A stretch of DNA of 63,355 bases, filler included, from Octopus bimaculoides (Eukaryota), in assembly GCF_001194135.2 (NCBI RefSeq). It is 10 parts of 8 records of this genome, joined end to end, with 100 filler letters (N's around TTAATTAATTAA, not from the genome) between each part and the next. Parts side by side here need not be neighbours in the genome. Positions count along the whole stretch, not along the records: positions 1 to 13,194 come from NC_068984.1; 9 more parts are not named here. One strand, written 5' to 3'. The notes under the pieces are model-generated. The model had not been told where the DNA came from. It was given only the letters and a program-made list of their open reading frames with translations, and did no database searches. Positions 29-13,194 of the stretch are shown one piece after another. Numbering within the stretch: the stretch's first letter is position 1; each line of letters begins with the position of its first letter. The position numbers and the translations under genes are program-made.

Positions 29-32
<4 letters not shown>

Positions 33-200
33 GCAGCGTGGAAGGTGTATATAAGCCATTTAAAATAACACACAAAAACTGTTAGATTCACTTCAACATA
101 TAAATTTAATTTGTCAAAATATTTTTGTCGCTTTGAGACCGCGACCTGTTCACTGACAAAATTCCGTGCTGCATCTGAGAAAGTAACAGTTAGTTCATGA
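29..200. repeat. ~175-bp interspersed repeat (probable PLE pseudo-LTR), left copy; inverted relative to 4200-4378
   Basis: The reverse complement of 4200-4378 aligns nearly base for base (e.g. aagccatttaaaataacacacaaaaac; gtcgctttgagaccgcgacctgttcactgacaaaatt). Confidence 0.85.
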
Positions 201-419
201 TATATATGTACGTGTGTATGTGTGTGTGTATGTATGTATGTAGGAGAATATACGAATAATAACAACAGACGAGGACAGGTGGTGTAAATAACAAAAGTAT
301 ATATTAGTATGACGCTCGGGAATACGGAAAGTCTTTGACGTTTCGAGCTACATATGTTGAAGAGCTACGCTCTTCAACATATGTATGTATGTGTGTGTAT
401 GCCTCTGTGTACAAAAAAA

Positions 420-1520
420 CAATTTCATAACCACCAACAATGAAATCCCACCCCTGTATGGCATTCGAAAAGGTAAAAAAAACACACAGGTAATGTACTT
501 GGGCCACCTACCCGACCTGTTTGTCGTGCCAACAATGCGAACAACCACAAAATATCGTATTTTCTCTCAGAATTCCTACGACCCTTAATAGAATTATCTG
601 CAGATGTATGTGATAGTACTGAAGACCTCCTTAGCGGGATCCGCGAATGCAACAACGCATGTGACCTCAGTGACCACCTCGTAGGTAGCATGGATGTGGT
701 ATCACTGTATCCTTCCATTGATGTAAACTTTGCTATCGATAAATGTATAGAGATAATTTGTGAAAGTAATATGACATTTAAAAATGTGGACGTATATGAA
801 CTAGGCCTCTTCCTGAACCTGACTTGTACCAATGAATATCTGTCACGGAATAATCTTGTATATGCTTGTCTCACCCGTAACAAACGAGGTAGACCACCTA
901 CCATTACCTCAGCATACAAAAAACCCACTGTGAACGCTGGCATGGCTGGACGAAGCGAGACCACCCACCTTCAGATGCACACGACATCAGAACTACTGTT
1001 GCACATGCCATCGGTGTCAGCCTTAGAACCACCCTTAAAAATCATATTTTTAAATTTAACAATAAACTGTATAAACAGGTGAAAGGCGGTGCTATTGAAG
1101 TAGGGATCGCCGGTGATGTTGCTAACCTCTTCATGGTATGGTGGGACAGACATTTTAAACAGTGCTTAGCGACCCGTAACATCTACTTAGCTATGTACTC
1201 TCGATACGTTGACATTAACCTTGTCGTGAAATGTAATACTAATACAGATATGGACACTCTACTAAATGAGGAACAGGTGATGACAGCTATACAACACATA
1301 GCTGACTCTATTCATACCGTAGACTACCCAGCTAAACACTTCAGTAAGAGATTACCCGCCCTAGATACTGAGCTGTGGATAGAAAATACTGTAATTGACG
1401 GAACTGTTAAATCCTGTCTACTCCACTGACACTACTCTAAACCTATGGCTGATCCACTGGTAACCCGTAGTGACTCTGCGATGTCAGGTACTGCCAAGAT
1501 CAACATCCTCGTAGCAGACT
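420..1520 (+). mobile_element. Penelope-like retroelement RT, Naiad/Chlamys-like, frameshifted
   Basis: Across frameshifts: PPLYGIRK, GPPTRPVCRAN, GSMDVVSLYPSID, LGLFLNLT, KRGRPPTIT, NHIFKFNNKLYKQVKGGAIEVGIAGDVANLFMVWWD, SRYVDINL (one catalytic D missing), LPALDTELW, KPMADP. Clade assignment rests on recalled motifs. Confidence 0.75.
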
Positions 1521-1544
1521 TAGTTAGAATATATATATATATAT

Positions 1545-1575
1545 ACTAGCAGAAATACCCGGCTTTGCCCGGGTT
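1545..1575 (-). mobile_element. Helitron 3' terminus (hairpin plus CTAG)
   Basis: Minus strand reads cccgg-gcaaag-ccggg tatttctg CTAG|T: a GC hairpin shortly upstream of CTAG followed by T. The body runs into the N gap at 1576. Confidence 0.7.
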
Positions 1576-1676
1576 NNNNNNNNNNNNNNNNNNNNNNNNN
1601 NNNNNNNNNNNNNNNNNNNNNNNNNNNNNNNNNNNNNNNNNNNNNNNNNNNNNNNNNNNNNNNNNNNNNNNNNNNT

Positions 1677-1925
1677 TCCTTGCAATTGGGTATGACTCCT
1701 TCGTGTATCACCTGGCTCGCAATACAGGTGACTAGGTTAAAGCCGACACTGCCAGATATTTTGAGCATCTCTGCAGTGATTCCTGATGGGCCGGGGGCTT
1801 TCCCTGTCTTCATGCTCTTAATTGCTTTATCTACCATGGTACTGTCGACTCGGATAGCTGATCCCTCTGTGGGGTCGACATTTGGCAGACTCTCTTTCTC
1901 CCATTCATTCTCTTTATTGAGCAAT
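1677..1925 (-). mobile_element. RTE-clade LINE fragment (RT N-terminal region)
   Basis: VDKAIKSMKTGKAPGPSGITAEMLK; homologous to the RTE segment at 31630-32000. Confidence 0.8.
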
Positions 1926-2190
1926 CTTTCGTAGTGGCGTCTCCAAACCTCATGGCATGTGGAGTCCCCACCACGAAACTTGATATGCTAGTAATAACAG
2001 CTAAACGCGGACAATCCAAATCTTGCATTTACTCAGGAAGTTGAACTGCAAGTTTCACACTTTTTACCAGAGAACATGTATTCGAAAACGAAAAAAAAAA
2101 ATGAAAAAAAAAGAAAGAAAGCCTGTAACTAAATTCGAAAGCAAAAAAAGAAAAAAAAACAAACTAATTTTTACTTTTACCTTTCTGAAA

Positions 2191-3048
2191 TCACTGTGGA
2201 TATATTTTGGCTATGCGCTTGATAAATGTCTGAAAGTTCTCCCACTTCATATCGTAATAATCACGGTACATTGCCTCATCAATATGTGACCATTTCATGT
2301 TACCACATGATCCACTTTTGTATTTCAGTCTACGTTTTATCCGTGACCAGAATGCCTCTACATTATTGGTACATACCCCAGTAACGGGATCAACAAAATT
2401 CTGTGAATGGTTCACGGTACCATGAATGTATCCCAGTTTCTGAAGATTTTGGTAACTGGGCCACATATCCGTGAAAATCGTAGTTCCTGGCTCCACATTT
2501 TCAATGATTGCAGCTTCTAACGTTTCAGCCTTTCTATCGGTTATATGTTGCAGGTAGCCCTTTTTCTGAGTGACATTGTAAAAGCCTATCACCCAAAACT
2601 TTTCAACTATTCTGCCAACCTCATATTTCCTCTTGAAAAGCAGGCTTTCATCCACTTGTACGATGTGGTTCAGTCCACCTCACTATTTCTTATCTTTCAG
2701 TAACTTGGCTGAACATATTTCTCGGCAGTATTCGGACCATTGAATGGCCGTGTCGTTGGTAATATTGTTCCAACTCATGGAACAGGTTACTGGCAATTCA
2801 GATATAAAGTCTGCTATTATTTGAAATAATGTAAACACTGTCAAGTGGTAGTTCTCTAAAAAAGTATTTTTCCTTATAAAGATCATTTTACTGCATGAAT
2901 TACATCGCCAAATAACTCCGTCAATAGCACGTTGAAAAGATTGAATTTTCATTTGACGACGACAAGTACATTCTTTTCTTTTTTTTTGTGCAATTAACTT
3001 GTTTTCTTTCAAAAAATCCAGAAAAATATCCTCCTGTACCTTTTCCAT
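2191..3048 (-). mobile_element. Merlin (IS1595/ISXO2-like) DDE transposase, disrupted by adjacent in-frame TAG TGA
   Basis: ORFs 2683-3048 and 2191-2655 are in the same frame, separated by two stops at 2680-2685. N-terminal CxC..CxxC, then GGLNHIVQVDES, TIFTDMWPSY, HGTVNHSQNFVDPVTGVCTNNVEAFWSRIK. Confidence 0.85.
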
Positions 3049-3153
3049 AATTCAGTACGAGGTGAAGACATTTTGGCAATGTGGGCTTCGAAAAATTTGC
3101 GCGACACACTAGTATCAAAACTTAAATTCAATTGTGAACAATATTGGCGAGAA

Positions 3154-3230
3154 GAGGTCAAGAAAGAGGAAGAGCCCTTTACAGAGAGAGGTCAAGAAAG
3201 CGGAAGAGTCCTTTACAGAGAGAGGCCAGG
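3154..3230 (+). repeat. 34-bp tandem duplication (2 copies plus a partial)
   Basis: gaggtcaagaaag(a/c)ggaagag(c/t)cctttacagaga at 3154-3187 and 3188-3221. Confidence 0.9.
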
Positions 3231-3246
3231 ATCCCGTCTTTTCATT

Positions 3247-3425
3247 TCAAATTGGTAGAGGGAGGTCAACAATTGTCACAATCATCATGTAGTCGGTGCC
3301 CTTGGTTTTAAATGGCAACTTATGAAATTTAACAATTCCATACACGTCAACCACTGTGTCTGGTTTCAAAGTAATTAAGGAGTTGTATGAATAGTTCCCT
3401 CGTTTAAACTTGTTTTTTTTTCCAT
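3247..3425 (-). pseudogene. POT1: 5' fragment of Protection of telomeres 1 (OB1 fold), truncated
   Basis: NYSYNSLITLKPDTVVDVYGIVKFHKLPFKTKGTDYMMIVTIVD aligns without gaps to recalled human POT1 [44 protein letters not shown] (26/44 identical by hand). The frame stops shortly after VD. Confidence 0.75.
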
Positions 3426-3583
3426 TTTTAAAAATCAAAATAGCTTTGCTTTAGGATCAATTGAAATGTTTCAAATTACAGTTTGTTTGTTTTTTAACAA
3501 AAACATTGCCGATTGGATTAAGAAATATTCTTCTCCGCACGCATACACCACAGGAGCGAAAACAAAATTCGAACACATTCTAA

Positions 3584-3862
3584 ATCAGCTGTCCTGCGGA
3601 TGTCAACATCACACTAAAGATTAGAGAAAAAGAGAACAACTACACCAAGCTACAGAGAAATTTGCAGATAGTCCACCCAGACTACAAGTTCAGATTCATA
3701 CCCGTGATTGTTGGGGATTGGGATATGTAACGAACTGCCACAACAAAAACCTGGAAAAATTAGGGTTCTCAAAACCTGAAATAAAAAGGCTGATTAGAAG
3801 ACTACAGATTCAAGCCATCAATGGAACTGCAAAGATATGTAAAACTTTCCAAAAATTTAGCA
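3584..3862 (+). mobile_element. C-terminal restriction-like endonuclease region of a non-LTR retrotransposon (R4/NeSL-like)
   Basis: ISCPADVNITLKIREKENNYTKLQRNLQIVHPDYKFRFIPVIVG, frameshift, LGYV...IQAINGTAKICKTF; resembles recalled RLE tails (KExxY-L, PIIIGALG). Confidence 0.6.
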
Positions 3863-4199
3863 CAGAAATACATATGCATACGCCTAGACATGAAAATACA
3901 TACATAAAAACGCATCCATAAAACAAACATACAAATCTGCGCATTCACTAACCCCAAATACTGCACACACACATATGCACAAATACCTAGATGATGTTGA
4001 TAAAAGTTCCAATGAAGGAGCCTTGAATCTACGTTAGAGTCCGGCTCTCTCTATGGACAAGAAATATAGAAATGAAACTGATTGATAACATACATGCATG
4101 CGTATAGGCATGCACACATGCACATGCGTGTACACAGATGCATACGCACACATGTATACATACATACATACATACATGCATACATACATACGTACATAT

Positions 4200-4440
4200 T
4201 TATCATGAACTAACAGTTAATTTCTCAGACGAAACAGAATTTTGTCAGTGAACAGGTCGCGGTCTCAAAGCGACGAAAATATTTTGACAAATTAAATTTA
4301 GATGTTGGTTGAAGTGAATCTAACGGTTTTTGTGTGTTATTTTAAATGGCTTATAAACACCTTCCATGCTGTAATTGTTTTCGTTCCAGCACACGATCTC
4401 AGATCAGGTCACTTGCTATGCTAGTACTTCTCCGTAACAT
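4200..4440. repeat. Right copy of the PLE-type repeat, carrying a minimal hammerhead
   Basis: Inverted homolog of 29-200. Confidence 0.85.
4241..4291 (+). ncRNA. Candidate minimal type-I hammerhead ribozyme, G3:C8 core variant
   Basis: Stem I tttgtca/tgacaaa; core GUGAACA; one extra G; stem II gtcgc/gcgac; GAAA; palindromic AATATT stem III; UH site UU. Confidence 0.5.
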
Positions 4441-5477: not shown

Positions 5478-6620
5478 GAGCTCTTGCTGTTTCACAGTGC
5501 GCCCAGTCCTTCCCGCCCCCACCACCTGTACTGAAAGTCTCTATCGGATGTCTCTCTCATGAGCACCTCCAAAGGCTTAATGTTCCCCCCATCCCTACTT
5601 AGGGTTTATATCCTATGTAATGTAGTGATTATGTAGCGCATAAAATAATGGTGTAGGGTATGCAGGTTGAAGGCTATTGTATGTTTATGAGTTCTGTCAA
5701 ATGTGAGCTTTCTTTTCAGGTACATGACGCTGCTGTCCCCAATCCCAGGGTCTTGGGGGCCCACACCACCCACACCCACAGAGTTGGCACACTGAAAGGT
5801 AGATCTGGTGAGATTGATGAGATGCTTAAATGGAGACGTGTAGATTTTTGCTGCATTCATGAAGTAAGGTGGAGAGGAAGTTCTGCTAGGCTCCTCACAA
5901 GCAAAGAACATAGATATAAAATTTCCTGGGCAGGGAACACTTTTGGGGTCAGGGGTGTGGGTATACTTCTTGCAAAGAAATGGGTTGATAAGGTAATCGA
6001 GGTAGTCAGAGTCTGTGATAGAATACTTACGATTTAATTAGTGCTGCAATATGGGTTGGCAACCATTATCTCAGCTTATGCCCCTCAGCCAGGGCTACCT
6101 GATGAACAGAAAGATCAATTTTATGACACCCTCTTGCAGACTATCTCATTGATGAATGACAGGGACCTTCTCTTTGTGGCTGGCGAATTCAATGGGCATG
6201 TTGGACAACATGCAGGGGGGCTTCCATGGTGTACATGGAGGCTATGATTTTGGTTTCCACAATGAGGATGAAACCAGGTTGCAATGCAAATGATCTTATG
6301 GTTTGTAATATTAACTTCAGGAAGCCTGTCAAGTCACCTATTCACCTACTGATCTGGTGGACACACTAGTCAAATTGATTACATCCTCATCAGGAAATGA
6401 GAAAGATGGCTACTTGTAAATGCCAAAACCTTCCCAGCTGAAGAATGCACCCCACAACATAGATTAGTAGTTAGTGACTTTAGGATCAGGGCTAAATGGA
6501 TGCCCAGAAGATGACCAGCATGGAGCAGAAGGGTCTGGAAGCTTAAAGATCCTGTGAATGGACAGATTTAGAAACATATTACTTGGAGCTTTTGACAAAA
6601 TAGAAGGGGGTTATAGCATC
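5478..6620 (+). mobile_element. RTE-clade LINE 5' part (5' UTR plus APE endonuclease), decayed
   Basis: VGTLKGRSGEI, CCIHEVRWRG, GVGILL, ISAYAPQ, AGEFNGHVG, QIDYIL; 5' UTR homologous to the reverse complement of 34470-34710. Confidence 0.9.
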
Positions 6621-6629
6621 ACATGATGT

Positions 6630-9600
6630 GGTACCTGATGCAGCTCTTGGCTCAACCTGATCCTATCAAACCAGAACACTGCTTCTAGCGGCAAGATGCG
6701 ACCCCTCTCTGCCATGGCCTTGATTGCTCGATGATACCATTTCCACTCGGCCTGTACGCTGCTCTGAATTAGTGGTGCACCTTCCACTTATCAAGCATAT
6801 CCTTCAATGTCTCTGAATGAAATGCAATGTCATTGTCCATCAACAATTCGTCCACAGGGCTCTGCTTGAGGAATATCTCATTCAGGATTCATGCAATCTC
6901 ATCTGCAGTACCTGTCTTCAATTCCCTCCAAATGGCCATCAGTCAACCATCGAGAGATACATCCCCTGCCGGCAGTGTGTCAAATTCACTGCCAATTGTC
7001 TCCAGTTGTGCTCTACCGAGACGTTTCTCTGATCATGCACACCTGGAGCAGGGTCAATAGATTGACACCTATCACAATTTCAGACTACCTTTTGGATGCT
7101 CTGCCTAGTGACATCGGTGTCAACACTCCTGGCAAGATACAAAGTTCTATCCATACCCATATGATGCATGGCATCTTCTTAGCTCCGAGTAACTGAACCT
7201 ATACACTGCAGCTATCCCCCGTTTTGAATCTTCCGGCTCTGCCAACCAGGCCTTTTTCAACCTGGTTAGAATGTCTGCCTTGTTCCTTTCTGAAGGCACA
7301 AAAACCATGCTCAGCTTCAAACCAAATTCGGCAGCTAGTTCTAGAATCCTTAGGTGGTGCTTTACTAACATCTCTGGTTCGACCCCTTTGGTTCAAACTC
7401 TCTTTTCACGAGTGATCACTGATCCTACTCAACCAAGTATGTTGGCTGAATCGGTTTGGATTTCGATGGAGTACAGGCCCCTCCACCATTTCAGGGCCAA
7501 ATTCACCCCCTTCAGCATTGTGTCCAACTCAGCCATATTGATGTGGTTGTAATCATCAGCTTTTCAAAGCCAGGCTGCGCCCCCCCCCCCATCATATGTT
7601 GACGCCTCCAATTTCCAGTACACCCCCTATCATTATGCTGCTAGCATAGCACTATACGGTCCCATTCTCCAATTTGGGCACGCACCAATTCACTCTTACT
7701 GGGTCTTCTGCTCTTGTCCTCTCTAGGATCTCCCGTGTCATCGCCACTGTCTCCTCTCCCACTGTGTCTCACCAGTTTGCCCCGTCAGTTTGTCTCTTGA
7801 TGTAGCTGCACACTGTCCGCAGTCACCCTGCATTTGAGTAGTGTCCCATGAGTCTCCCACACATCGAGAATAGTTCTTTCCTGCTGATACTGGTACCTAG
7901 TTCTGGGCTCTCATTCCTCCTCTGGAACACCAATGAGCCTGATCTATTTCTTTAAAGCTTGAGCCCCAGTGCAGCTTCTCCAACCATTGGCTCCAGTGGC
8001 TTCACAATCAGCCCAAACTTCTTGAGGTGACTTACAACCTCTGTGACAAACACTACAGTCACATCTACCAAGATATCGTCTATATAGGAGTTGGTGGCCC
8101 TTCTTATCCTGTTCACCTTTCCCAGGATAGACTTGAGCACTATCACTCAACCTAGTCAAACAGTATGTCTGGTTCTTGTATCACACCAGCTGATACTGCC
8201 ATGGTTTCTCATTCACATGGAGCTGCAAATATACTGACTTCAAGTCAACAGTTGTCGCTGCCCTTGTCATCTTCCTCCACTCACACAGCATCTCACTATG
8301 GACGTCAGTTGCCTCACCACTTGTGTGGCACAATACATGACCATTCATCTCCCGAAAGTCCAGTACCGGCCTAACTTTTTCCCTTTGTTGCCTGCACCAC
8401 TGCCATTAGTGGTAACACTCCACTCAACACCTCCCCTTCCACGGGGTAAGGACACCCTCCTTAATCCATCTTTCTATCTCTCCTTCAAACTCACTCCTGG
8501 CATATCCCTTCAAAGTATGCTGGTAGCAGCCCAGCCTGTTCCTCAGCATCAGGGGCTCCCCTTTCCAGTGTCACTCTAACATCGACCACTGCTTGAAAAT
8601 CTTTGTCCTCAACAGTGTAAGCAGTACAGTCCCTCGCAGAGCTCTGCTCTCTCTCATGTTGCAGACCCACGGAACATGACACCCCTGCACCACCAAGCGA
8701 AACGTCTCCACCAATACTGACACCTCCAAGGTGGTTGATCGCATCCATCCCCTTCACCATATCAATTCCATCTATCACATGGTCAATCACAATCACCCGC
8801 AGCCTCAGTGTTGTGCCTTGCTCTGCTACACTTCGCTGCTACCCTTACGTCCAATCTTGCAACTGTTGACGATCCAAACACTACTTGTCCCCTTCCATTT
8901 TTTATCACCCTCAGGGTTACAAGAGATGTCATACAGCCCATATCTATGAGGACTTTGAACGCCTTTTCCCCAGAAAGACTTCCACTATGGACAACGACTG
9001 TACAAGCACCTCTATTTCCTTGTGGCGTTTTCCCTGGCTGCAATTTCAAGCAATATGCCTAGTCTGCCTGCACCGGTAGCAAATGGGTCCGGACTTTATC
9101 TCCACGTAGTCCCTTGCCGCGTGCGGTTCCTGACACTTAAAGCACAGGCCTGTGAATGGTTGCTGTCGCTCCACAGCAGTTTTATCCTCCCTGTTCTTTA
9201 CCGGTCGCTGTACCACACAGTGGGCTTCCACAGCTGACATTGCCACTACCTTCTACCTGATATTTTGTGTCGATACGTGGGCTTGAATGATGAGTCCGCT
9301 CATCACCATTTTCTTGCAGGCTGGCAGTTGTTACAGTTGCACCGATATATTGTTGGGAAAGCTATTTACCAAGGTCAGTCATGCCACCTTCTCTAGGCCC
9401 TTTCTGGTAAAGCCAGACAGTATGGCTAGTCTCCAAACCTCTGCAGCATACTCATTGACCTGTTCCTCTGTCCACCTGAACATTCCTAGCTTAGCAAATG
9501 TAGCATACATCCCCTCTGTATAAGATTCCTTCAAGCACTGCTCAATCTTCGTCATGCTCAGTTGGTCTTCCTCATCCATCCTGAGGTACAGCACCAGAGC

Positions 9601-9720: not shown

Positions 9721-10493
9721 GGCTTCGCTACTGATCCTTATCTTCTCTGCCATCACATGGAAGTGGGTAACAACAATGAAGAAATATACTTTTACATGAT
9801 TGCTGAAATAGCTTGTTGTATGAAGGAACTGTAATGCAGGGAAATAAGAAACAATTCGCCTACCTTCTCATTGTTTTGTCACCCAGCTGTACTCAATCAA
9901 AACTCATGCCAAGCCTGCGCACCTAACAATAGCAGCTACCAGTACCTGTCCCTATCAGCTTGCTTGCCTCACGTCCATTGGTCATGAGCATCCAAGGCAA
10001 AAGAGGATGACCCTGATCTTCCTTCCCTCACTTCCTCTTTCACCCTTCCTGCTCAGGTCAAGCCTCTTGACCATTGACGCTTTCTGTGTTCTGTAAACTC
10101 AAATTCTCAGTTTCGAGCACATCCTTTCTGTCTGTCGTGGCTTGTGCTTGAAGCCAAGAATTTGAGTTTACAGAACATGGGAACAACATTTATACATCAA
10201 CTAAGGAAACACAACTAGATCTCATAATGCAGGAAAACAGTTACATAACCAAATACCTACAAACCTGGAGAACTACGTTGCCTGGAAACAATTGTAGTGA
10301 TTACAAATATATGTTCCTCTGTACTCCTTGTTGACTCCATCTCATTCCATTATCCATTCACACACTACAGAAGCTCCAACGCAAATCTGGCAGTACGTAA
10401 AATACTACTGCTGGATAGCACTGGGTAAAATCTGAAGATGGATGCGCTTTATAGTGTACTCTACTACATTCTTAACAGAATATAACCTAACTT

Positions 10494-10524
<31 letters not shown>

Positions 10525-10959
10525 AATAAATTTAAATAATAAGGGTAAAAATTGATATTAATTAAATTAATATCAATTTAAACCAGTGGCCTAGCATATT
10601 GAAAAAGATCTAAAGATTCAGAAAATTATATTACATACATATAAGAGGAATGACCACTAGGTGGATTCCTAATATGCTAAAGGTAGACCCCATATGGTCT
10701 GACTACTAAGAAAAATTGTTCTCAAGAAATTTTGGCAAACACCAGAACATAAAGCGAGCAAGACAAATGAAAATATACAAAATATAGTGATATATATATA
10801 GTGAGAACAATTTTTCTTAGTGGTCAGACCATATAGTGTCTATCGTTAGCATATTAGGAATCCACCTAGTGGTTATTCCTCTTATATGCATATATATATA
10901 TATCCAAATTCTAAAGTTGGGTTGTTCGTTAGTGGCAAAAATATCAATGCGCTTGCTTA

Positions 10960-12330
10960 ATCCTATTTTTCTGTATTCTCGCATCTTAATCTGGGATCTA
11001 TGTACCATCATCCTCTGGTGAAGACTGTTTTAGCTTGACCAATATATTGTCCTTAACACCCTTAGCAGGTTAATACATATATTAGGTTTTTCAAAGCACA
11101 TGTGAAGTTGTTTTTTACTGTAAAACGTTGACCCTTTATGAGAGAGAATTCTGATCCTTCAATTAGGTTGACACATATACCACAGTTAGGTCTTCTGCAT
11201 TTTTTTACTGTTGGTTTCGATGTTGTTGAGGAGTGTACTTGGGCCTGTGTTAGAGGACTTTTCAATGACTTGGGTTGCCTTTTGCTCTTCATGATGGTGT
11301 GCGTTTGGAGGATTTGATCCATTCTATGGTCCATTTTTAGTAAAGGGATGTTCTGGAGGATGGTGTCGAAGGCCTCTTTGTTTAGGGGGTTGTGTGTGGA
11401 TATGTATGGTAGGGCCTTTGGTTGTAAATCCTTCTTTAGTCTGAAGTGTCTGAGTTCATGGATGTTGAGTTGTAGGGTAAGCCTATATCAATTAGTGGTG
11501 GTGGGTAGTTCCTGCTCATGAGTGTATTCTTTAGCTCATGTAGTCGTATCCCTGGTGCTTGTTTCAGATACTATAGTACAAATCCTTTTTGCCAGCTTGT
11601 AAGGGATATTCATTCTAGTGTGTATGGGGTGGTAAGAGTTGAATGGCAGATATTACTTGGAGTCCGTGGGCTTATAGTAGATGTCTGTTTCTATTTTGTT
11701 GTTGGATTTCTTAAAGAGGATGTCAAGAAATGGAAGTTGTTGGTGGCTATATTCCATTGTAAATTGAATGTTTATGTCAAGTCTATTGAGAGGTGCTTAA
11801 AATTCGTTAACTCTCTCTATACTTTCGTGCCAAAGAATGAAACAGTCATCTAGATATCTTATCCAGTTATTTTCTATGTATGGGTTTTCGTATTTTTCTA
11901 GTACCTTACGATAAAGATTGATTTCTAGGTACCCCATGACTAGGTTAGTAAAGGAGTGGGGGGGGGGGCATTCTCGTACCCATCGCAGTCTCCGATTTCT
12001 GTTGCTAGAAGTTGTCATTAAATATGAAGAAGTTATTCTCTAAGATGAATTTTAGCCCTTCTATTATGAATTCTTTGTTGATGTGGTGTGGGAGTTCATT
12101 GGAGTAATTCTCTAACCAGAATTGGATTGCCCCTATTCCTAGGCTGTGAGGGATATTGGAAAAGAGGTTGACTTCATCAAAAGATACTAGTAGGGTGTTT
12201 TTATTTATTGTTTCAGGAAGGTGATTGAGCATATCCAGGTCGTCCCTTATATAGCTTTTGACATTCTTGAGGAATGGTTTTAAGAGGGTGCCTAAAAAAT
12301 TACTGAGGTGGTGAGAACAATATAGTGGTC
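10960..12330 (-). mobile_element. Penelope-like element (RT plus Cys-linker/GIY-YIG, Neptune-like), decayed
   Basis: LVSFDEVNLFSNIP, ILENNFFIFND, TAMGTRM, WIRYLDDCFILW, YYKPTDSK, KCRRPNCGIC, FTCALKNLIYVLTC.GC.GQYIG. Confidence 0.85.
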
Positions 12331-12914
12331 AAACTAGAAACAGTCTATGCCAGAGGATGACGGTACATAGATCCCAGGTTAACCACTACAGCTACAACCA
12401 TTAAAGAAGAGTCCATAAACAATTTACTGTGTCACAGCCCTCCTATATTTTTCTTTCTTCTTCTCCCTCTTCTTTCCCTACTCCTACTTTTCTTCCTCCT
12501 TCAACTCCTCCTCCTCCTCCTCTTCTTCTTCTTCTTCTTCAACAACTTTTCCTCCTCCCTCAGCAGCTCCTGCTTAAACCATCAATTCGCTGTACCCAAA
12601 CTATTCTTTCAGGTTTACTACTATCCACCTACGAGGCATTCACAAAGAAATAGAGAGAGAGAGAGACAGACTATCTGAAGATGATGGAAATATTTACCTA
12701 TTTAAAGACTATGGAAATATCTTCGAAACATTTTGCTTAAATTTTTTCTCCAATTTAATTATTTTTCTTATTTTACTCTTAGCTGAAACTGGAACTAAAA
12801 TGTACTTCATGATAAAATTACTTTAACATTTTCTATCTTGTCTTATTTTCTTTATACATATTGGCTCGTATGTTACTTTTCTACCTTCTATATATATATA
12901 TATATATATATATA

Positions 12915-13194
12915 CGATGTATATCTAGATAGATACGACCTTAGAGATTTCTGCCCTAGTAGACGTCTAAGAGGTAGACCACCCACAATTACCTCTATGG
13001 CTAGGAAGACCCCTATAGAGAGATGGAGTGGATGGACCAGAGCTATTCGGACTCCCACCAATATCCACCAGGTAAAGAAAATGATCGCACATGCACTAGG
13101 AGCTAGTATAAAGGTCACCCTAAAAGGCCACACCTTTAAATTTAACAACAAATTATACGCCCAGGACGAGGGGGCAGCCATCGGGGTTAGTATC
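12915..13194 (+). mobile_element. Second Naiad-like PLE RT fragment
   Basis: RGRPPTITS..ERWSGW..IAHALG..TLKGHTFKFNNKLYAQDEGAAIGVSI, homologous to 880-1110; cut by the spacer. Confidence 0.75.

What the first reader, a model, noticed from the sequence alone, without database searches (positions are those of the whole stretch)
3247..3520. Telomere-protein POT1 OB1 fragment sitting in front of a Merlin transposase
Seen: 44 uninterrupted codons with 26 identities to recalled human POT1 residues 8-51. An ATG at 3425-3423 comes into frame if one A is added to the A9 run (MEKKNKFKRGNYSY). A CCAAT lies ~90 nt upstream. Similarity ends at VD, where a small deletion appears to break a DPSL-like continuation. 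The Merlin ATG follows ~200 nt later on the same strand. As I recall, vertebrate POT1 has an intron within KGT-D; none is present here. Inference: a retro-processed or transposon-captured POT1 5' end that could have supplied a promoter or an ssDNA-binding module to the element. I know of no described Merlin-POT1 association.
Basis: partly seen in the sequence, partly recalled or inferred. Interest (0 to 1): 0.75.

Follow-up and report, generated by a model that had tools for sequence, protein, structure and literature searches.

The report
Truncated POT1 retrocopy beside dead Merlin
This is an intron-less, cut-off and broken copy of the first ~300 bases of an octopus POT1 (telomere protein) messenger RNA, lying in transposon debris next to an inactivated Merlin transposase gene; it is an ordinary processed pseudogene fragment, not a POT1-transposase fusion.

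Summary
The minus-strand ORF at 3247-3438 matches the POT1 OB1 domain: human POT1 residues 8-51, 26/44 identical, E 1e-10; Octopus vulgaris POT1 residues 11-62, 85% identical, E 3e-21.

Comparison with the O. vulgaris POT1 gene shows what the fragment is. Window 3536->3265 is colinear with the spliced mRNA: about 110 nt of 5'UTR, exon 1, exon 2 and the first 29 nt of exon 3. Two introns (887 and 1378 nt in O. vulgaris, same positions in Argonauta) are missing exactly at the exon junctions. Clear similarity stops in mid-exon 3.

It is therefore a 3'-truncated processed copy. It is neither the host's first exon nor a DNA-level capture.

- The ATG is out of frame because of the A9 run.
- A stop follows six codons after VD.
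- Only about a third of OB1 is present.
- Four in-frame stops separate it from the Merlin ATG.
- The Merlin transposase itself carries adjacent TAG TGA stops.
- The CCAAT lies inside the 5'UTR-equivalent, so no promoter was copied.

A probable 5'-truncated LINE abuts the POT1 5' end head-to-head. This suggests twin priming or template switching.

A 90%-identical long inverted repeat brackets the whole 4.4-kb block. Carriage inside a Merlin-family element cannot be excluded without the genome.

The parts
3426..3536 (-). Clear similarity to O. vulgaris begins abruptly at 3536 (GGAGAAG).
   Evidence: Aligns to L001:9879-10000, immediately upstream of the O. vulgaris POT1 ATG. There are 95 matches and 11 mismatches over the 106 nt compared (3531-3426), plus one 11-nt indel in a T run. 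Upstream of 3536 identity drops to about 50%.
3406..3425 (-). Exon-1 equivalent: ATG (3425-3423), an A9 run (3421-3413), ...AAGTTT. It is 20 nt against 18 nt in O. vulgaris, so the ATG is out of frame with the rest.
   Evidence: O. vulgaris exon 1 is ATGGAAAAAAGCAAGTTT followed by the donor GTAAGT (L001:10001-10018). The window continues directly into exon 2 sequence.
3294..3405 (-). Exon-2 equivalent (112 nt, K7..G of D44). The 887-nt intron 1 of O. vulgaris is absent at its 5' edge, and the 1378-nt intron 2 is absent at its 3' edge.
   Evidence: 105/112 identical to L001:10906-11017. The junctions AAGTTT|AAA and GGCACYG|AYTAC are exact. The same intron positions occur in Argonauta hians.
3265..3293 (-). 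First 29 nt of the exon-3 equivalent (DYMMIVTIVD). This is the end of clear POT1 similarity, in the middle of the parental exon.
   Evidence: 26/29 identical to L001:12397-12425. O. vulgaris exon 3 continues ESLIQADEKLKC....
3238..3264 (-). Possible diverged continuation of exon 3 (LPLPI*NEK, with TGA at 3249-3247). Frame and length are kept, and ATGAAAAG matches O. vulgaris at the same offset.
   Evidence: tblastn of P0042 extends to 3238. An 8-mer at the same offset is expected at about 1e-4 to 1e-3 by my own estimate.
3049..3237 (-). Spacer between the POT1 piece and the Merlin ATG. It has further in-frame stops and holds a 34-nt tandem duplication at 3153-3225. It may be the Merlin 5' leader.
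   Evidence: Translation (4 stops in the shared frame). Tandem Repeats Finder gives period 34, 2.1 copies, 94% matches.
2191..3048 (-). Merlin (IS1595-like) transposase pseudogene. It is full length and colinear with intact homologues, and the DDE residues are kept. It is broken by adjacent in-frame TAG TGA at 2685-2680.
   Evidence: Pfam PF12762 DDE_Tnp_IS1595, E 1.6e-17. Homologues of 287-295 aa at 44-59% identity, and 85% identity to an O. bimaculoides fragment. The stops were read.
3584..3921 (+). Probable C-terminal tail of a non-LTR retrotransposon ORF2. It is 5'-truncated and points away from the POT1 piece, so the two 5' ends meet head-to-head near 3537-3583.
   Evidence: The + strand is open for 46 + 67 codons in AT-rich DNA. 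The identity as a LINE tail rests on my recall of the ...IPVIVGALG...LG...GTA.I... motif. Pfam gave nothing.
29..242 (+). Left arm of a long inverted repeat that brackets the whole block. The piece starts inside the flanking (AT)n, so the outer end is not visible.
   Evidence: 218 nt, 90% identical to the reverse complement of 4161-4376; alignment A1.
4161..4433 (-). Right arm of the long inverted repeat. Read inwards, its outer terminus is GGAGAAGTACTAGC....
   Evidence: The same two arms lie back-to-back as a 345-nt foldback at L001:30415-30759 in O. vulgaris.
1680..2050 (-). Fragment resembling the N-terminal part of a non-LTR reverse transcriptase, directly downstream of the Merlin ORF and cut by a 100-N scaffold gap (1576-1675).
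   Evidence: ORF 1520..1924 (GKAPGPSGITAEMLK motif, my reading). Pfam gave no hit. The N run was measured.

Best explanation
Window 3536->3265 (perhaps to 3238) on the minus strand is a 3'-truncated processed pseudogene fragment of the octopod POT1 gene.

Shown:
- A spliced POT1 mRNA was the source. The copy is colinear with the 5'UTR, exon 1, exon 2 and the start of exon 3.
- Both introns are removed exactly.
- The copy lies in a locus that shows no other POT1 sequence.

Shown, on function: it is non-functional as it stands.
- The ATG is shifted by an A-run length change.
- A stop follows soon after codon 53.
- Only about the first third of the OB1 fold is present.
- There is no open frame into Merlin.
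- Merlin itself is inactivated by TAG TGA.

Inferred, on origin:
- A LINE reverse transcriptase made the copy.
- The unusual 'complete 5' end, missing 3' end' shape arose because a cDNA that had reached the 5' end of the POT1 mRNA was joined, 3' end to 3' end, to the cDNA of the neighbouring 5'-truncated LINE. This would be twin priming or template switching, and it gives the observed head-to-head arrangement.
- The alternative is that a longer retrocopy was later cut down by the neighbouring insertions.

Inferred, on the Merlin link: the adjacency to Merlin is positional, a matter of nested transposon debris, and not functional.
For: - POT1 identity: Pfam PF02765; PDB POT1 chains, E 1e-10; 41 POT1-type hits in the representative library; O. 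vulgaris POT1 at 85% over 52 aa, E 2.6e-21.
- Processed nature: O. vulgaris exon/intron map; junction-exact colinearity with the spliced mRNA including 5'UTR; the same two intron positions in Argonauta hians, so the introns are ancestral in octopods.
- Truncation and isolation: no other POT1 segment in 13.2 kb; no similarity to the O. vulgaris POT1 flanks or introns other than dispersed repeats.
- Non-function: frame and stops; Merlin stops.
- Divergence from O. vulgaris is similar in UTR (89.6%) and CDS (92.9%). It gives dN 0.052 and dS 0.163 on only 10 differences, with 5 changes on the window lineage against 3 on the O. vulgaris lineage. This gives no sign of special constraint or decay.
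- 5' inversions ascribed to twin priming are reported in 3 of 23 human polymorphic processed pseudogenes (PMC12016303).
- LINEs, including L1-Tx1, are abundant and recently active in O. vulgaris (PMC13282606).
Against: - No poly(A) tail, and no target-site duplication of 8 nt or more around the POT1+LINE block.
- The LINE identity of 3584-3921 rests on recall, not on a tool.
- The parent gene of the same species was not available. The age of the copy and selection on it are therefore unknown.
- A 90%-identical long inverted repeat encloses Merlin and the POT1 piece together. The adjacency may therefore not be pure chance.
Confidence: 0.8

Rival explanations
1. Cargo of a Merlin-family element. 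The 29-242 / 4161-4433 inverted repeats would be the long TIRs of the Merlin copy. The POT1 cDNA piece, with the RT fragments, would be internal cargo acquired by the element, for example by nested retro-insertion or gap repair. It would have been moved and copied with the element, as in transduplication.
For: - The inverted repeat is 218 nt or longer at 90% identity and brackets the transposase and the POT1 piece.
- The arms occur alone, back-to-back, as a 345-nt foldback in O. vulgaris, as a MITE derivative would.
- The right terminus reads GG... inwards. Merlin TIRs are reported as 24-462 bp with terminal GG (PMC8101967).
- The transposase ORF is well preserved, yet no short TIRs lie next to it.
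Against: - No second copy was seen anywhere. These searches could hardly have found one.
- The left outer terminus and the TSDs are not visible, because the piece starts in (AT)n.
- In the O. vulgaris foldback the two outer ends are not clearly symmetrical.
- The arms end inwards in (TGTA)n microsatellites, as SINE tails do.
- Being inside an element does not show that the composite ever moved.
Confidence: 0.1
2. The genuine 5' end of the host's POT1 gene (or of a DNA-level paralogue) that lost introns 1 and 2. The rest of the gene would lie beyond a new intron or an assembly break after codon 53.
For: - The start codon position and the 5'UTR match the real gene.
- The coding part is no more derived than the O. 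vulgaris gene.
Against: - There is no GT donor at or near the break (GTTGAC|CTCCCT), and the break is inside an exon of O. vulgaris and Argonauta.
- The ATG is out of frame, and an in-frame stop follows.
- The upstream promoter-side DNA and the downstream 3.2 kb bear no resemblance to the POT1 locus and consist of transposon ORFs.
Confidence: 0.03
3. An exapted fragment. It would be transcribed as a short 59-aa peptide (if the A run is really A10), as an antisense or small-RNA source against POT1, or as a 5' leader for Merlin transcripts.
For: - With one more A the ORF starts at the parental ATG.
- dN/dS against O. vulgaris is below 1 (0.32). Most of that path lies in functional POT1 lineages, so the figure says little about the copy.
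Against: - A third of an OB fold is unlikely to fold.
- No promoter was copied.
- Both neighbours are dead.
- No expression data could be obtained.
Confidence: 0.04
4. An assembly artefact. cDNA or chimeric reads would have been joined into repeat-rich sequence.
For: - The scaffold has a 100-N gap 1.6 kb away.
- There is a homopolymer-length problem at the ATG.
Against: - The fragment is embedded without gaps between unrelated sequences on both sides.
- It differs from the only available parent by 7-10%, including a scrambled stretch after codon 53. This looks like an aged genomic copy rather than fresh cDNA.
Confidence: 0.03

Closest known systems
Processed pseudogenes (retrocopies) made by LINE reverse transcriptase, including those with 5' inversion ascribed to twin priming (Esnault et al. 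2000 and Ostertag & Kazazian 2001, as cited in PMC12016303)
   Same: - Introns are missing exactly at the exon junctions.
- The copy is colinear with the mRNA, including UTR.
- It sits at a locus unrelated to the parent and is dead on arrival.
- It lies inverted next to a 5'-truncated LINE, with the RNA 5' ends meeting. This is the geometry twin priming produces.
   Different: - Classical retrocopies keep the 3' end and poly(A) and lose the 5' end. This one keeps the complete 5' end and lacks everything after codon 53-62, and it has no poly(A) or detectable TSD.
- The partner in the inversion is a different RNA (a LINE), not the rest of POT1.
Chimeric retrocopies formed by template switching of LINE RT (e.g. 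U6-L1 chimeras; PMC4476161 listed, not read)
   Same: Two unrelated RNAs are joined in one retro-insertion, one of them a 5'-truncated LINE.
   Different: Those chimeras are head-to-tail, in the same orientation. Here the two parts are head-to-head.
Gene-fragment capture by DNA transposons (Pack-MULE, Helitron or CACTA transduplication; my own knowledge)
   Same: A host gene fragment lies next to a DDE transposase, and possibly between long inverted repeats.
   Different: - Captured fragments are normally genomic DNA that still has its introns. This one is spliced.
- No evidence of multiple copies exists.
- No such case is described for Merlin. I found none in the full-text searches, and the two Merlin papers I consulted by term look-up only showed none.
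Functional POT1 duplicates (e.g. rodent Pot1a/Pot1b; my own knowledge)
   Same: A second POT1-derived sequence in a genome.
   Different: Those are complete, intron-containing, expressed genes. This is a fragment of roughly 300 nt without an intact ORF.

Membership tests
POT1 N-terminal OB fold (Pfam PF02765) | Significant sequence similarity to POT1 OB1 | tested here: met
   Pfam E 8.1e-7, just above the gathering score. PDB POT1 chains, E 1e-10. O. vulgaris POT1, E 2.6e-21.
POT1 N-terminal OB fold (Pfam PF02765) | A complete OB1 domain (about 140 profile positions) in an intact reading frame | tested here: not met
   Only profile positions 3-43 of 140 are present. The ATG is out of frame, and there is a stop at 3249-3247.
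Processed pseudogene / retrocopy | Parental introns absent exactly at exon-exon junctions | tested here: met
   Two junctions were checked against O. vulgaris L001. Introns at the same positions occur in Argonauta L002.
Processed pseudogene / retrocopy | Colinear with the mature mRNA including untranslated region, with similarity ending at the transcript end | tested here: met
   About 110 nt of 5'UTR-equivalent is present, and similarity begins abruptly at 3536. The parental TSS itself is not annotated, so 'transcript end' is an inference.
Processed pseudogene / retrocopy | 3' poly(A) tail | tested here: not met
   The copy ends inside exon 3, and no A-run follows.
Processed pseudogene / retrocopy | Flanking target-site duplication | tested here: not met
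   There is no direct repeat of 8 nt or more between 3205-3270 and 3922-4260. The true right boundary is uncertain because it lies in microsatellite.
Processed pseudogene / retrocopy | An intron-containing parent gene elsewhere in the same genome | not testable with these tools
   No eukaryotic genome search was available. The parent was seen only in O. vulgaris, O. sinensis and Argonauta.
Merlin (IS1595-like) DNA transposon | DDE_Tnp_IS1595 transposase with the DDE triad | tested here: met
   PF12762, E 1.6e-17. The invariant D and E columns are kept in alignment A2.
Merlin (IS1595-like) DNA transposon | Uninterrupted transposase ORF | tested here: not met
   In-frame TAG TGA at 2685-2680.
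Merlin (IS1595-like) DNA transposon | TIRs (24-462 bp, terminal GG) flanked by 8-9 bp TSDs (PMC8101967) | tested here: inconclusive
   No inverted repeat lies close to the ORF. A candidate long pair at 29-242 / 4161-4433 has a GG terminus on the right. The left end is cut by the start of the piece, so TSDs are not visible.
Transposon-captured gene fragment (transduplication) | The same fragment present in several copies of the element | not testable with these tools
   The exact-product look-up and the metagenome scan found nothing. Neither covers octopus genomes adequately.
Twin-priming / template-switch chimera | Inverted segment whose RNA-5' end abuts the 5'-truncated end of a LINE, within one pair of TSDs | tested here: inconclusive
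   The orientation fits. The LINE identity rests on recall only, and no TSD was found.

The most novel reading that the evidence does not exclude
The POT1 cDNA piece would be internal cargo of a long-TIR Merlin-family element (about 29-4433) and would have been mobilised with it. This would be the first case of a Merlin element carrying a spliced host-gene fragment. It could feed antisense or small RNAs against a telomere-protection gene.
Probability: 0.08. Interest if true: 0.5.

Novelty: new member of a known kind. Interest (0 to 1): 0.2.

Why it matters
It matters little for telomere or transposon biology. The fragment cannot make a DNA-binding domain, is not fused to the transposase, and brought no promoter with it.

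Its modest value lies elsewhere:
- It is a clean, junction-exact example that host mRNAs are reverse-transcribed and inserted in an octopod genome.
- It has an unusual shape, with the 5' end kept, the 3' end lost, and a head-to-head join to a truncated LINE. This points to twin priming or template switching by cephalopod LINE machinery.
- It is a caution for gene annotation. Such fragments can seed false 'POT1-like' or chimeric gene models.

If the block turned out to be a mobile Merlin composite, it would be a new kind of cargo for that superfamily.

Tried and rejected
No runs could be found, read laying was not used, and transcription and read support for the A9 run are untested.
- The search for homologous proteins with the 57-aa peptide found no candidate because of the word-index limit. 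The exhaustive representative search did work. Its top hit, P0001, is a repeat-inflated false positive (8 stretches, 32% identity).
- Exact-product look-ups found nothing on record for the two Merlin ORFs, the 63-aa POT1 ORF and O. sinensis POT1.
- A metagenome scan for the exon 2-3 junction gave 0 hits.
- A search for short Merlin TIRs around the ORF found none. Logan contigs of a 58%-identical Merlin relative showed no TIRs and no non-coding similarity.
- A search for an upstream non-coding POT1 exon in the window's 3532-3620, against 10 kb upstream in O. vulgaris and 5 kb upstream in Argonauta, found nothing.
- A search for other copies of the putative LINE tail in the window, L001 and L002 found none.
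- Pfam on neighbouring ORFs gave only sub-threshold hits. The RT, LTR and Penelope labels are therefore my reading of motifs.
- Rfam and tRNA scans gave only microsatellite-driven sub-threshold hits and no tRNA.
- The first BLAST impression that the CDS (97%) is far better kept than the UTR (82%) was rejected. It was an artefact of local alignment ends. Full alignments give 92.9% against 89.6%.
- TSD search: none of 8 nt or more.

Full report
**1. What is in the sequence**

On the minus strand, the ORF at 3247..3438 (63 aa) reads MIFKNGKKNKFKRGNYSYNSLITLKPDTVVDVYGIVKFHKLPFKTKGTDYMMIVTIVDLPLPI*.

- It hits Pfam PF02765 (POT1/CDC13 ssDNA-binding OB). E is 8.1e-7 and the score is 29.4 bits against a cutoff of 29, but only profile positions 3-43 of 140 are covered.
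- It hits the human POT1 chains in the PDB at E 1.1e-10. Query 14-58 aligns with residues 8-52, and I counted 26 of 44 identities.
- An exhaustive HMMER search of 1.84 billion representatives gave 41 hits. Those I read (P0002-P0007) are POT1 proteins. The exception is the top hit, P0001, a repeat-inflated false positive.
- The ATG at 3425-3423 is one base out of frame because of the run G+A9+C. One more A gives MEKKNKFKRGNYSY.
- The CCAAT is at 3516-3512, 87 nt upstream of the ATG.
- The Merlin ATG (3048) lies 199 nt beyond the POT1-frame stop. It is in the same frame, but four stops intervene.

**2. Whose POT1 it is**

The best relatives are cephalopod proteins. Argonauta hians POT1-like (P0002) is 65% identical. 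Octopus vulgaris and O. sinensis POT1 (P0042, P0062) start MEKSKFKTRTYSYNSLITLKPNTVVDVYGIVKFHKLPFKTKGTDYLMIVTIVDESLIQADEK.... A tblastn of P0042 on the window gives 44/52 identities, E 2.6e-21, and no other POT1 segment anywhere in the 13.2 kb.

The window is therefore octopod DNA. It is not identical to O. vulgaris. Its Merlin is 85% identical, over the aligned part, to an O. bimaculoides protein fragment. I could not determine the species.

**3. The decisive comparison**

I fetched the O. vulgaris POT1 locus (L001, gene 10001-39411) and mapped its exons:

| Feature | L001 coordinates | Sequence landmarks |
|---|---|---|
| Exon 1 | 10001-10018 | ATGGAAAAAAGCAAGTTT, then donor GTAAGT |
| Intron 1 | 887 nt | |
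| Exon 2 | 10906-11017 | ends ...AAGGGCACTG, then donor GTAGGG |
| Intron 2 | 1378 nt | |
| Exon 3 | from 12397 | ATTACTTGATGATTGTGACAATTGTTGATGAATCA... |

The window's minus strand reads ...AAGTTT|AAACGAGGG...GGCACCG|ACTACATGATGATTGTGACAATTGTTGAC. Exon 1, exon 2 and exon 3 sequences are joined exactly at the exon boundaries, with both introns absent.

Upstream of the ATG, about 110 nt align with the O. vulgaris sequence just before its ATG. Over the 106 nt compared there are 95 matches and 11 mismatches, plus an 11-nt T-run indel. The similarity then stops abruptly at window 3536 (GGAGAAG).

Argonauta (L002) has introns at the same two positions, after codon 5 and at KGT|D. The introns are therefore ancestral, and their absence here is derived.

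Clear similarity ends after GTTGA(C) at codon 53, in the middle of parental exon 3, with no GT donor there. The next six codons differ (LPLPI* against ESLIQA). Frame and length are kept, and ATGAAAAG ((N/D)EK) matches at the same offset. The copy may therefore extend to 3238.

No other part of the window resembles the O. vulgaris POT1 flanks or introns, apart from dispersed repeats.

Conclusion: this is a 3'-truncated processed (mRNA-derived) copy of the POT1 5' end. It is neither the host's first exon nor a DNA-level capture.

**4. Functional state**

- Only about a third of OB1 is present.
- The ATG is out of frame. Exon 1 is 20 nt here against 18 nt in O. vulgaris.
- A TGA follows at 3249-3247.
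- Four stops lie in the shared frame before the Merlin ATG.
- The CCAAT lies within the 5'UTR-equivalent, downstream of where the mRNA-colinear part begins. It reads CCAAC in O. vulgaris. No promoter was copied.

Divergence from O. vulgaris:

| Region | Identity |
|---|---|
| Codons 7-53 | 131/141 (92.9%) |
| 5'UTR | 89.6% |

dN is 0.052 and dS is 0.163, based on only 10 differences. Polarised with Argonauta, 5 changes fall on the window lineage, 3 on the O. vulgaris lineage, and 2 are ambiguous. Without the same-species parent this says nothing about selection on the copy. It shows only that the copy and O. vulgaris POT1 are 7-10% apart. That figure is compatible with a species difference: PMC13282606 gives 13-33 My for O. 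vulgaris against O. bimaculoides.

**5. The neighbours**

*Merlin.* The ORFs 2683..3048 and 2191..2655 are in one frame and are separated by TAG TGA plus nine sense codons. The second ORF hits PF12762 DDE_Tnp_IS1595 at E 1.6e-17. Read through, the 283 codons align end to end with intact 287-295-aa homologues, and the invariant D and E columns are kept. This is a young-looking but inactivated Merlin transposase. I found no short TIRs near it.

*Upstream of the POT1 5' end.* The + strand at 3584-3921 is open for 46 + 67 codons. It reads ...DVNITLKIREKENNYTKLQRNLQIVHPDYKFRFIPVIVG/GYVTNCHNKNLEKLGFSKPEIKRLIRRLQIQAINGTAKICK.... From memory I recognise this as the C-terminal tail of a widespread invertebrate non-LTR ORF2. 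No tool confirmed it. If it is right, a 5'-truncated LINE and the POT1 copy meet head-to-head within 3537-3583.

*Downstream of Merlin.* There are further RT-like fragments and a 100-N gap.

**6. How the odd shape could arise**

Ordinary LINE-made retrocopies keep the 3' end. This copy keeps a complete 5' end and loses the 3' end.

A head-to-head join of the POT1 5' end to a 5'-truncated LINE is the geometry expected in one of two cases:
- The second DNA strand primed on a POT1 mRNA and ran to its 5' end while the first strand copied the LINE (twin priming).
- The LINE RT switched onto the 3' end of a POT1 first-strand cDNA.

5' inversions are reported in 3 of 23 polymorphic human processed pseudogenes (PMC12016303). 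I found no TSD of 8 nt or more and no poly(A), so this step is inference, at roughly 0.3. The alternative is a longer retrocopy later cut down by the neighbouring insertions.

**7. Is it inside a Merlin element?**

A long inverted repeat (29-242 against 4161-4376, 218 nt, 90% identical, with the right arm running on to 4433) brackets the transposase, the POT1 piece and the RT debris. The same arms lie back-to-back as a 345-nt foldback at L001:30415-30759. The right terminus, read inwards, starts GG. Merlin TIRs are described as 24-462 bp with terminal GG and 8-9-bp TSDs (PMC8101967).

These arms could therefore be the TIRs of this Merlin, which would place the POT1 piece between them. Against this:
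- The left outer end is cut by the start of the piece.
- No TSDs are visible.
- The O. vulgaris foldback's outer ends are not clearly symmetrical.
- The arms end inwards in (TGTA)n, as SINE tails do.

Even if the piece is inside, a nested retro-insertion is not the same as capture and mobilisation. Only copy number can tell, and I could not test it.

**8. Comparison with known things, and verdict**

This is a processed pseudogene fragment, a known kind, with an uncommon 5'-retaining, inverted-next-to-LINE structure.
- It differs from Pack-MULE-type capture, where introns are kept and copies are multiple.
- It differs from functional POT1 duplicates, which are complete genes.

I found no described Merlin-POT1 association in the full-text searches I ran. 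The evidence here gives no reason to propose a functional one.

Interest is low (0.2). The most novel reading not excluded, a mobile Merlin composite carrying a spliced host fragment, has a probability of about 0.08.

**9. Limits**

There is therefore no read or RNA evidence.
- No eukaryotic genome-wide DNA search was available.
- All TE labels other than Merlin rest on my reading of motifs.

Noticed in passing
window 29-242 and 4161-4433; L001:30415-30759: A long inverted repeat (218 nt aligned, 90% identical) brackets a 4.4-kb block that holds the Merlin ORF, the POT1 piece and RT fragments. The same two arms lie back-to-back as a 345-nt foldback inside an intron of O. vulgaris POT1. They may be Merlin TIRs with a MITE derivative, or an unrelated SINE/MITE pair.
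   Followed up: partly
window 2680-2685 (-): The Merlin transposase is otherwise full length and colinear with intact homologues. Its only defect is two adjacent in-frame stops (TAG TGA), at the position where homologues have K-M, K-L, Q-L or L-L.
   Followed up: yes
window 3153-3225: A 34-nt unit (AGAGGTCAAGAAAGAGGAAGAGCCCTTTACAGAG) is repeated 2.1 times at 94% identity, between the POT1 piece and the Merlin ATG. Its origin is unknown.
   Followed up: no
window 3584-3921 (+): An open stretch of 46 + 67 codons with one frameshift. It looks like the C-terminal tail of a non-LTR retrotransposon ORF2, followed by a 3' region that ends in ACAT/GCAT-type microsatellite (4089-4205).
   Followed up: partly
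window 349-385: A near-perfect 37-nt palindrome (catatgttgaagagc tac gctcttcaacatatg) just inside the left inverted-repeat arm.
   Followed up: no
window 7147-9594 (-): A run of minus-strand ORFs with LTR-retrotransposon-like motifs: CCHC zinc knuckles (Pfam zf-CCHC E 0.004, below cutoff), YIDD, and NKADILTR. The region's GC content (about 0.47-0.51) is higher than in the rest of the piece.
   Followed up: partly
window 690-1429 (+), 11062-12232 (-), 12838-13194 (+): RT-like fragments. Two of them share the motif RGRPPTITS. The ORFs at 11062-11334 and 11797-12232 carry GIY-YIG-like and YLDD motifs reminiscent of Penelope-like elements. Pfam hits were all sub-threshold.
   Followed up: partly
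window 5660-6247 (+): Two consecutive ORFs that read like the apurinic-endonuclease domain of a LINE. There was no Pfam hit at E<=1.
   Followed up: partly
L001 and L002: In both O. vulgaris and Argonauta hians, POT1 is followed tail-to-tail by an ITIH-like gene (VIT, VWA, ITI_HC_C). Both also have a strong acceptor-like site shortly upstream of the ATG exon, which hints at an unannotated non-coding first exon.
   Followed up: no
representative-library hits P0003, P0010, P0013, P0020, P0032 and others: Many POT1-type proteins have the OB1 match starting at residue 150-200. In P0003 the N-terminal extension of about 150 aa itself looks OB-like.
   Followed up: no
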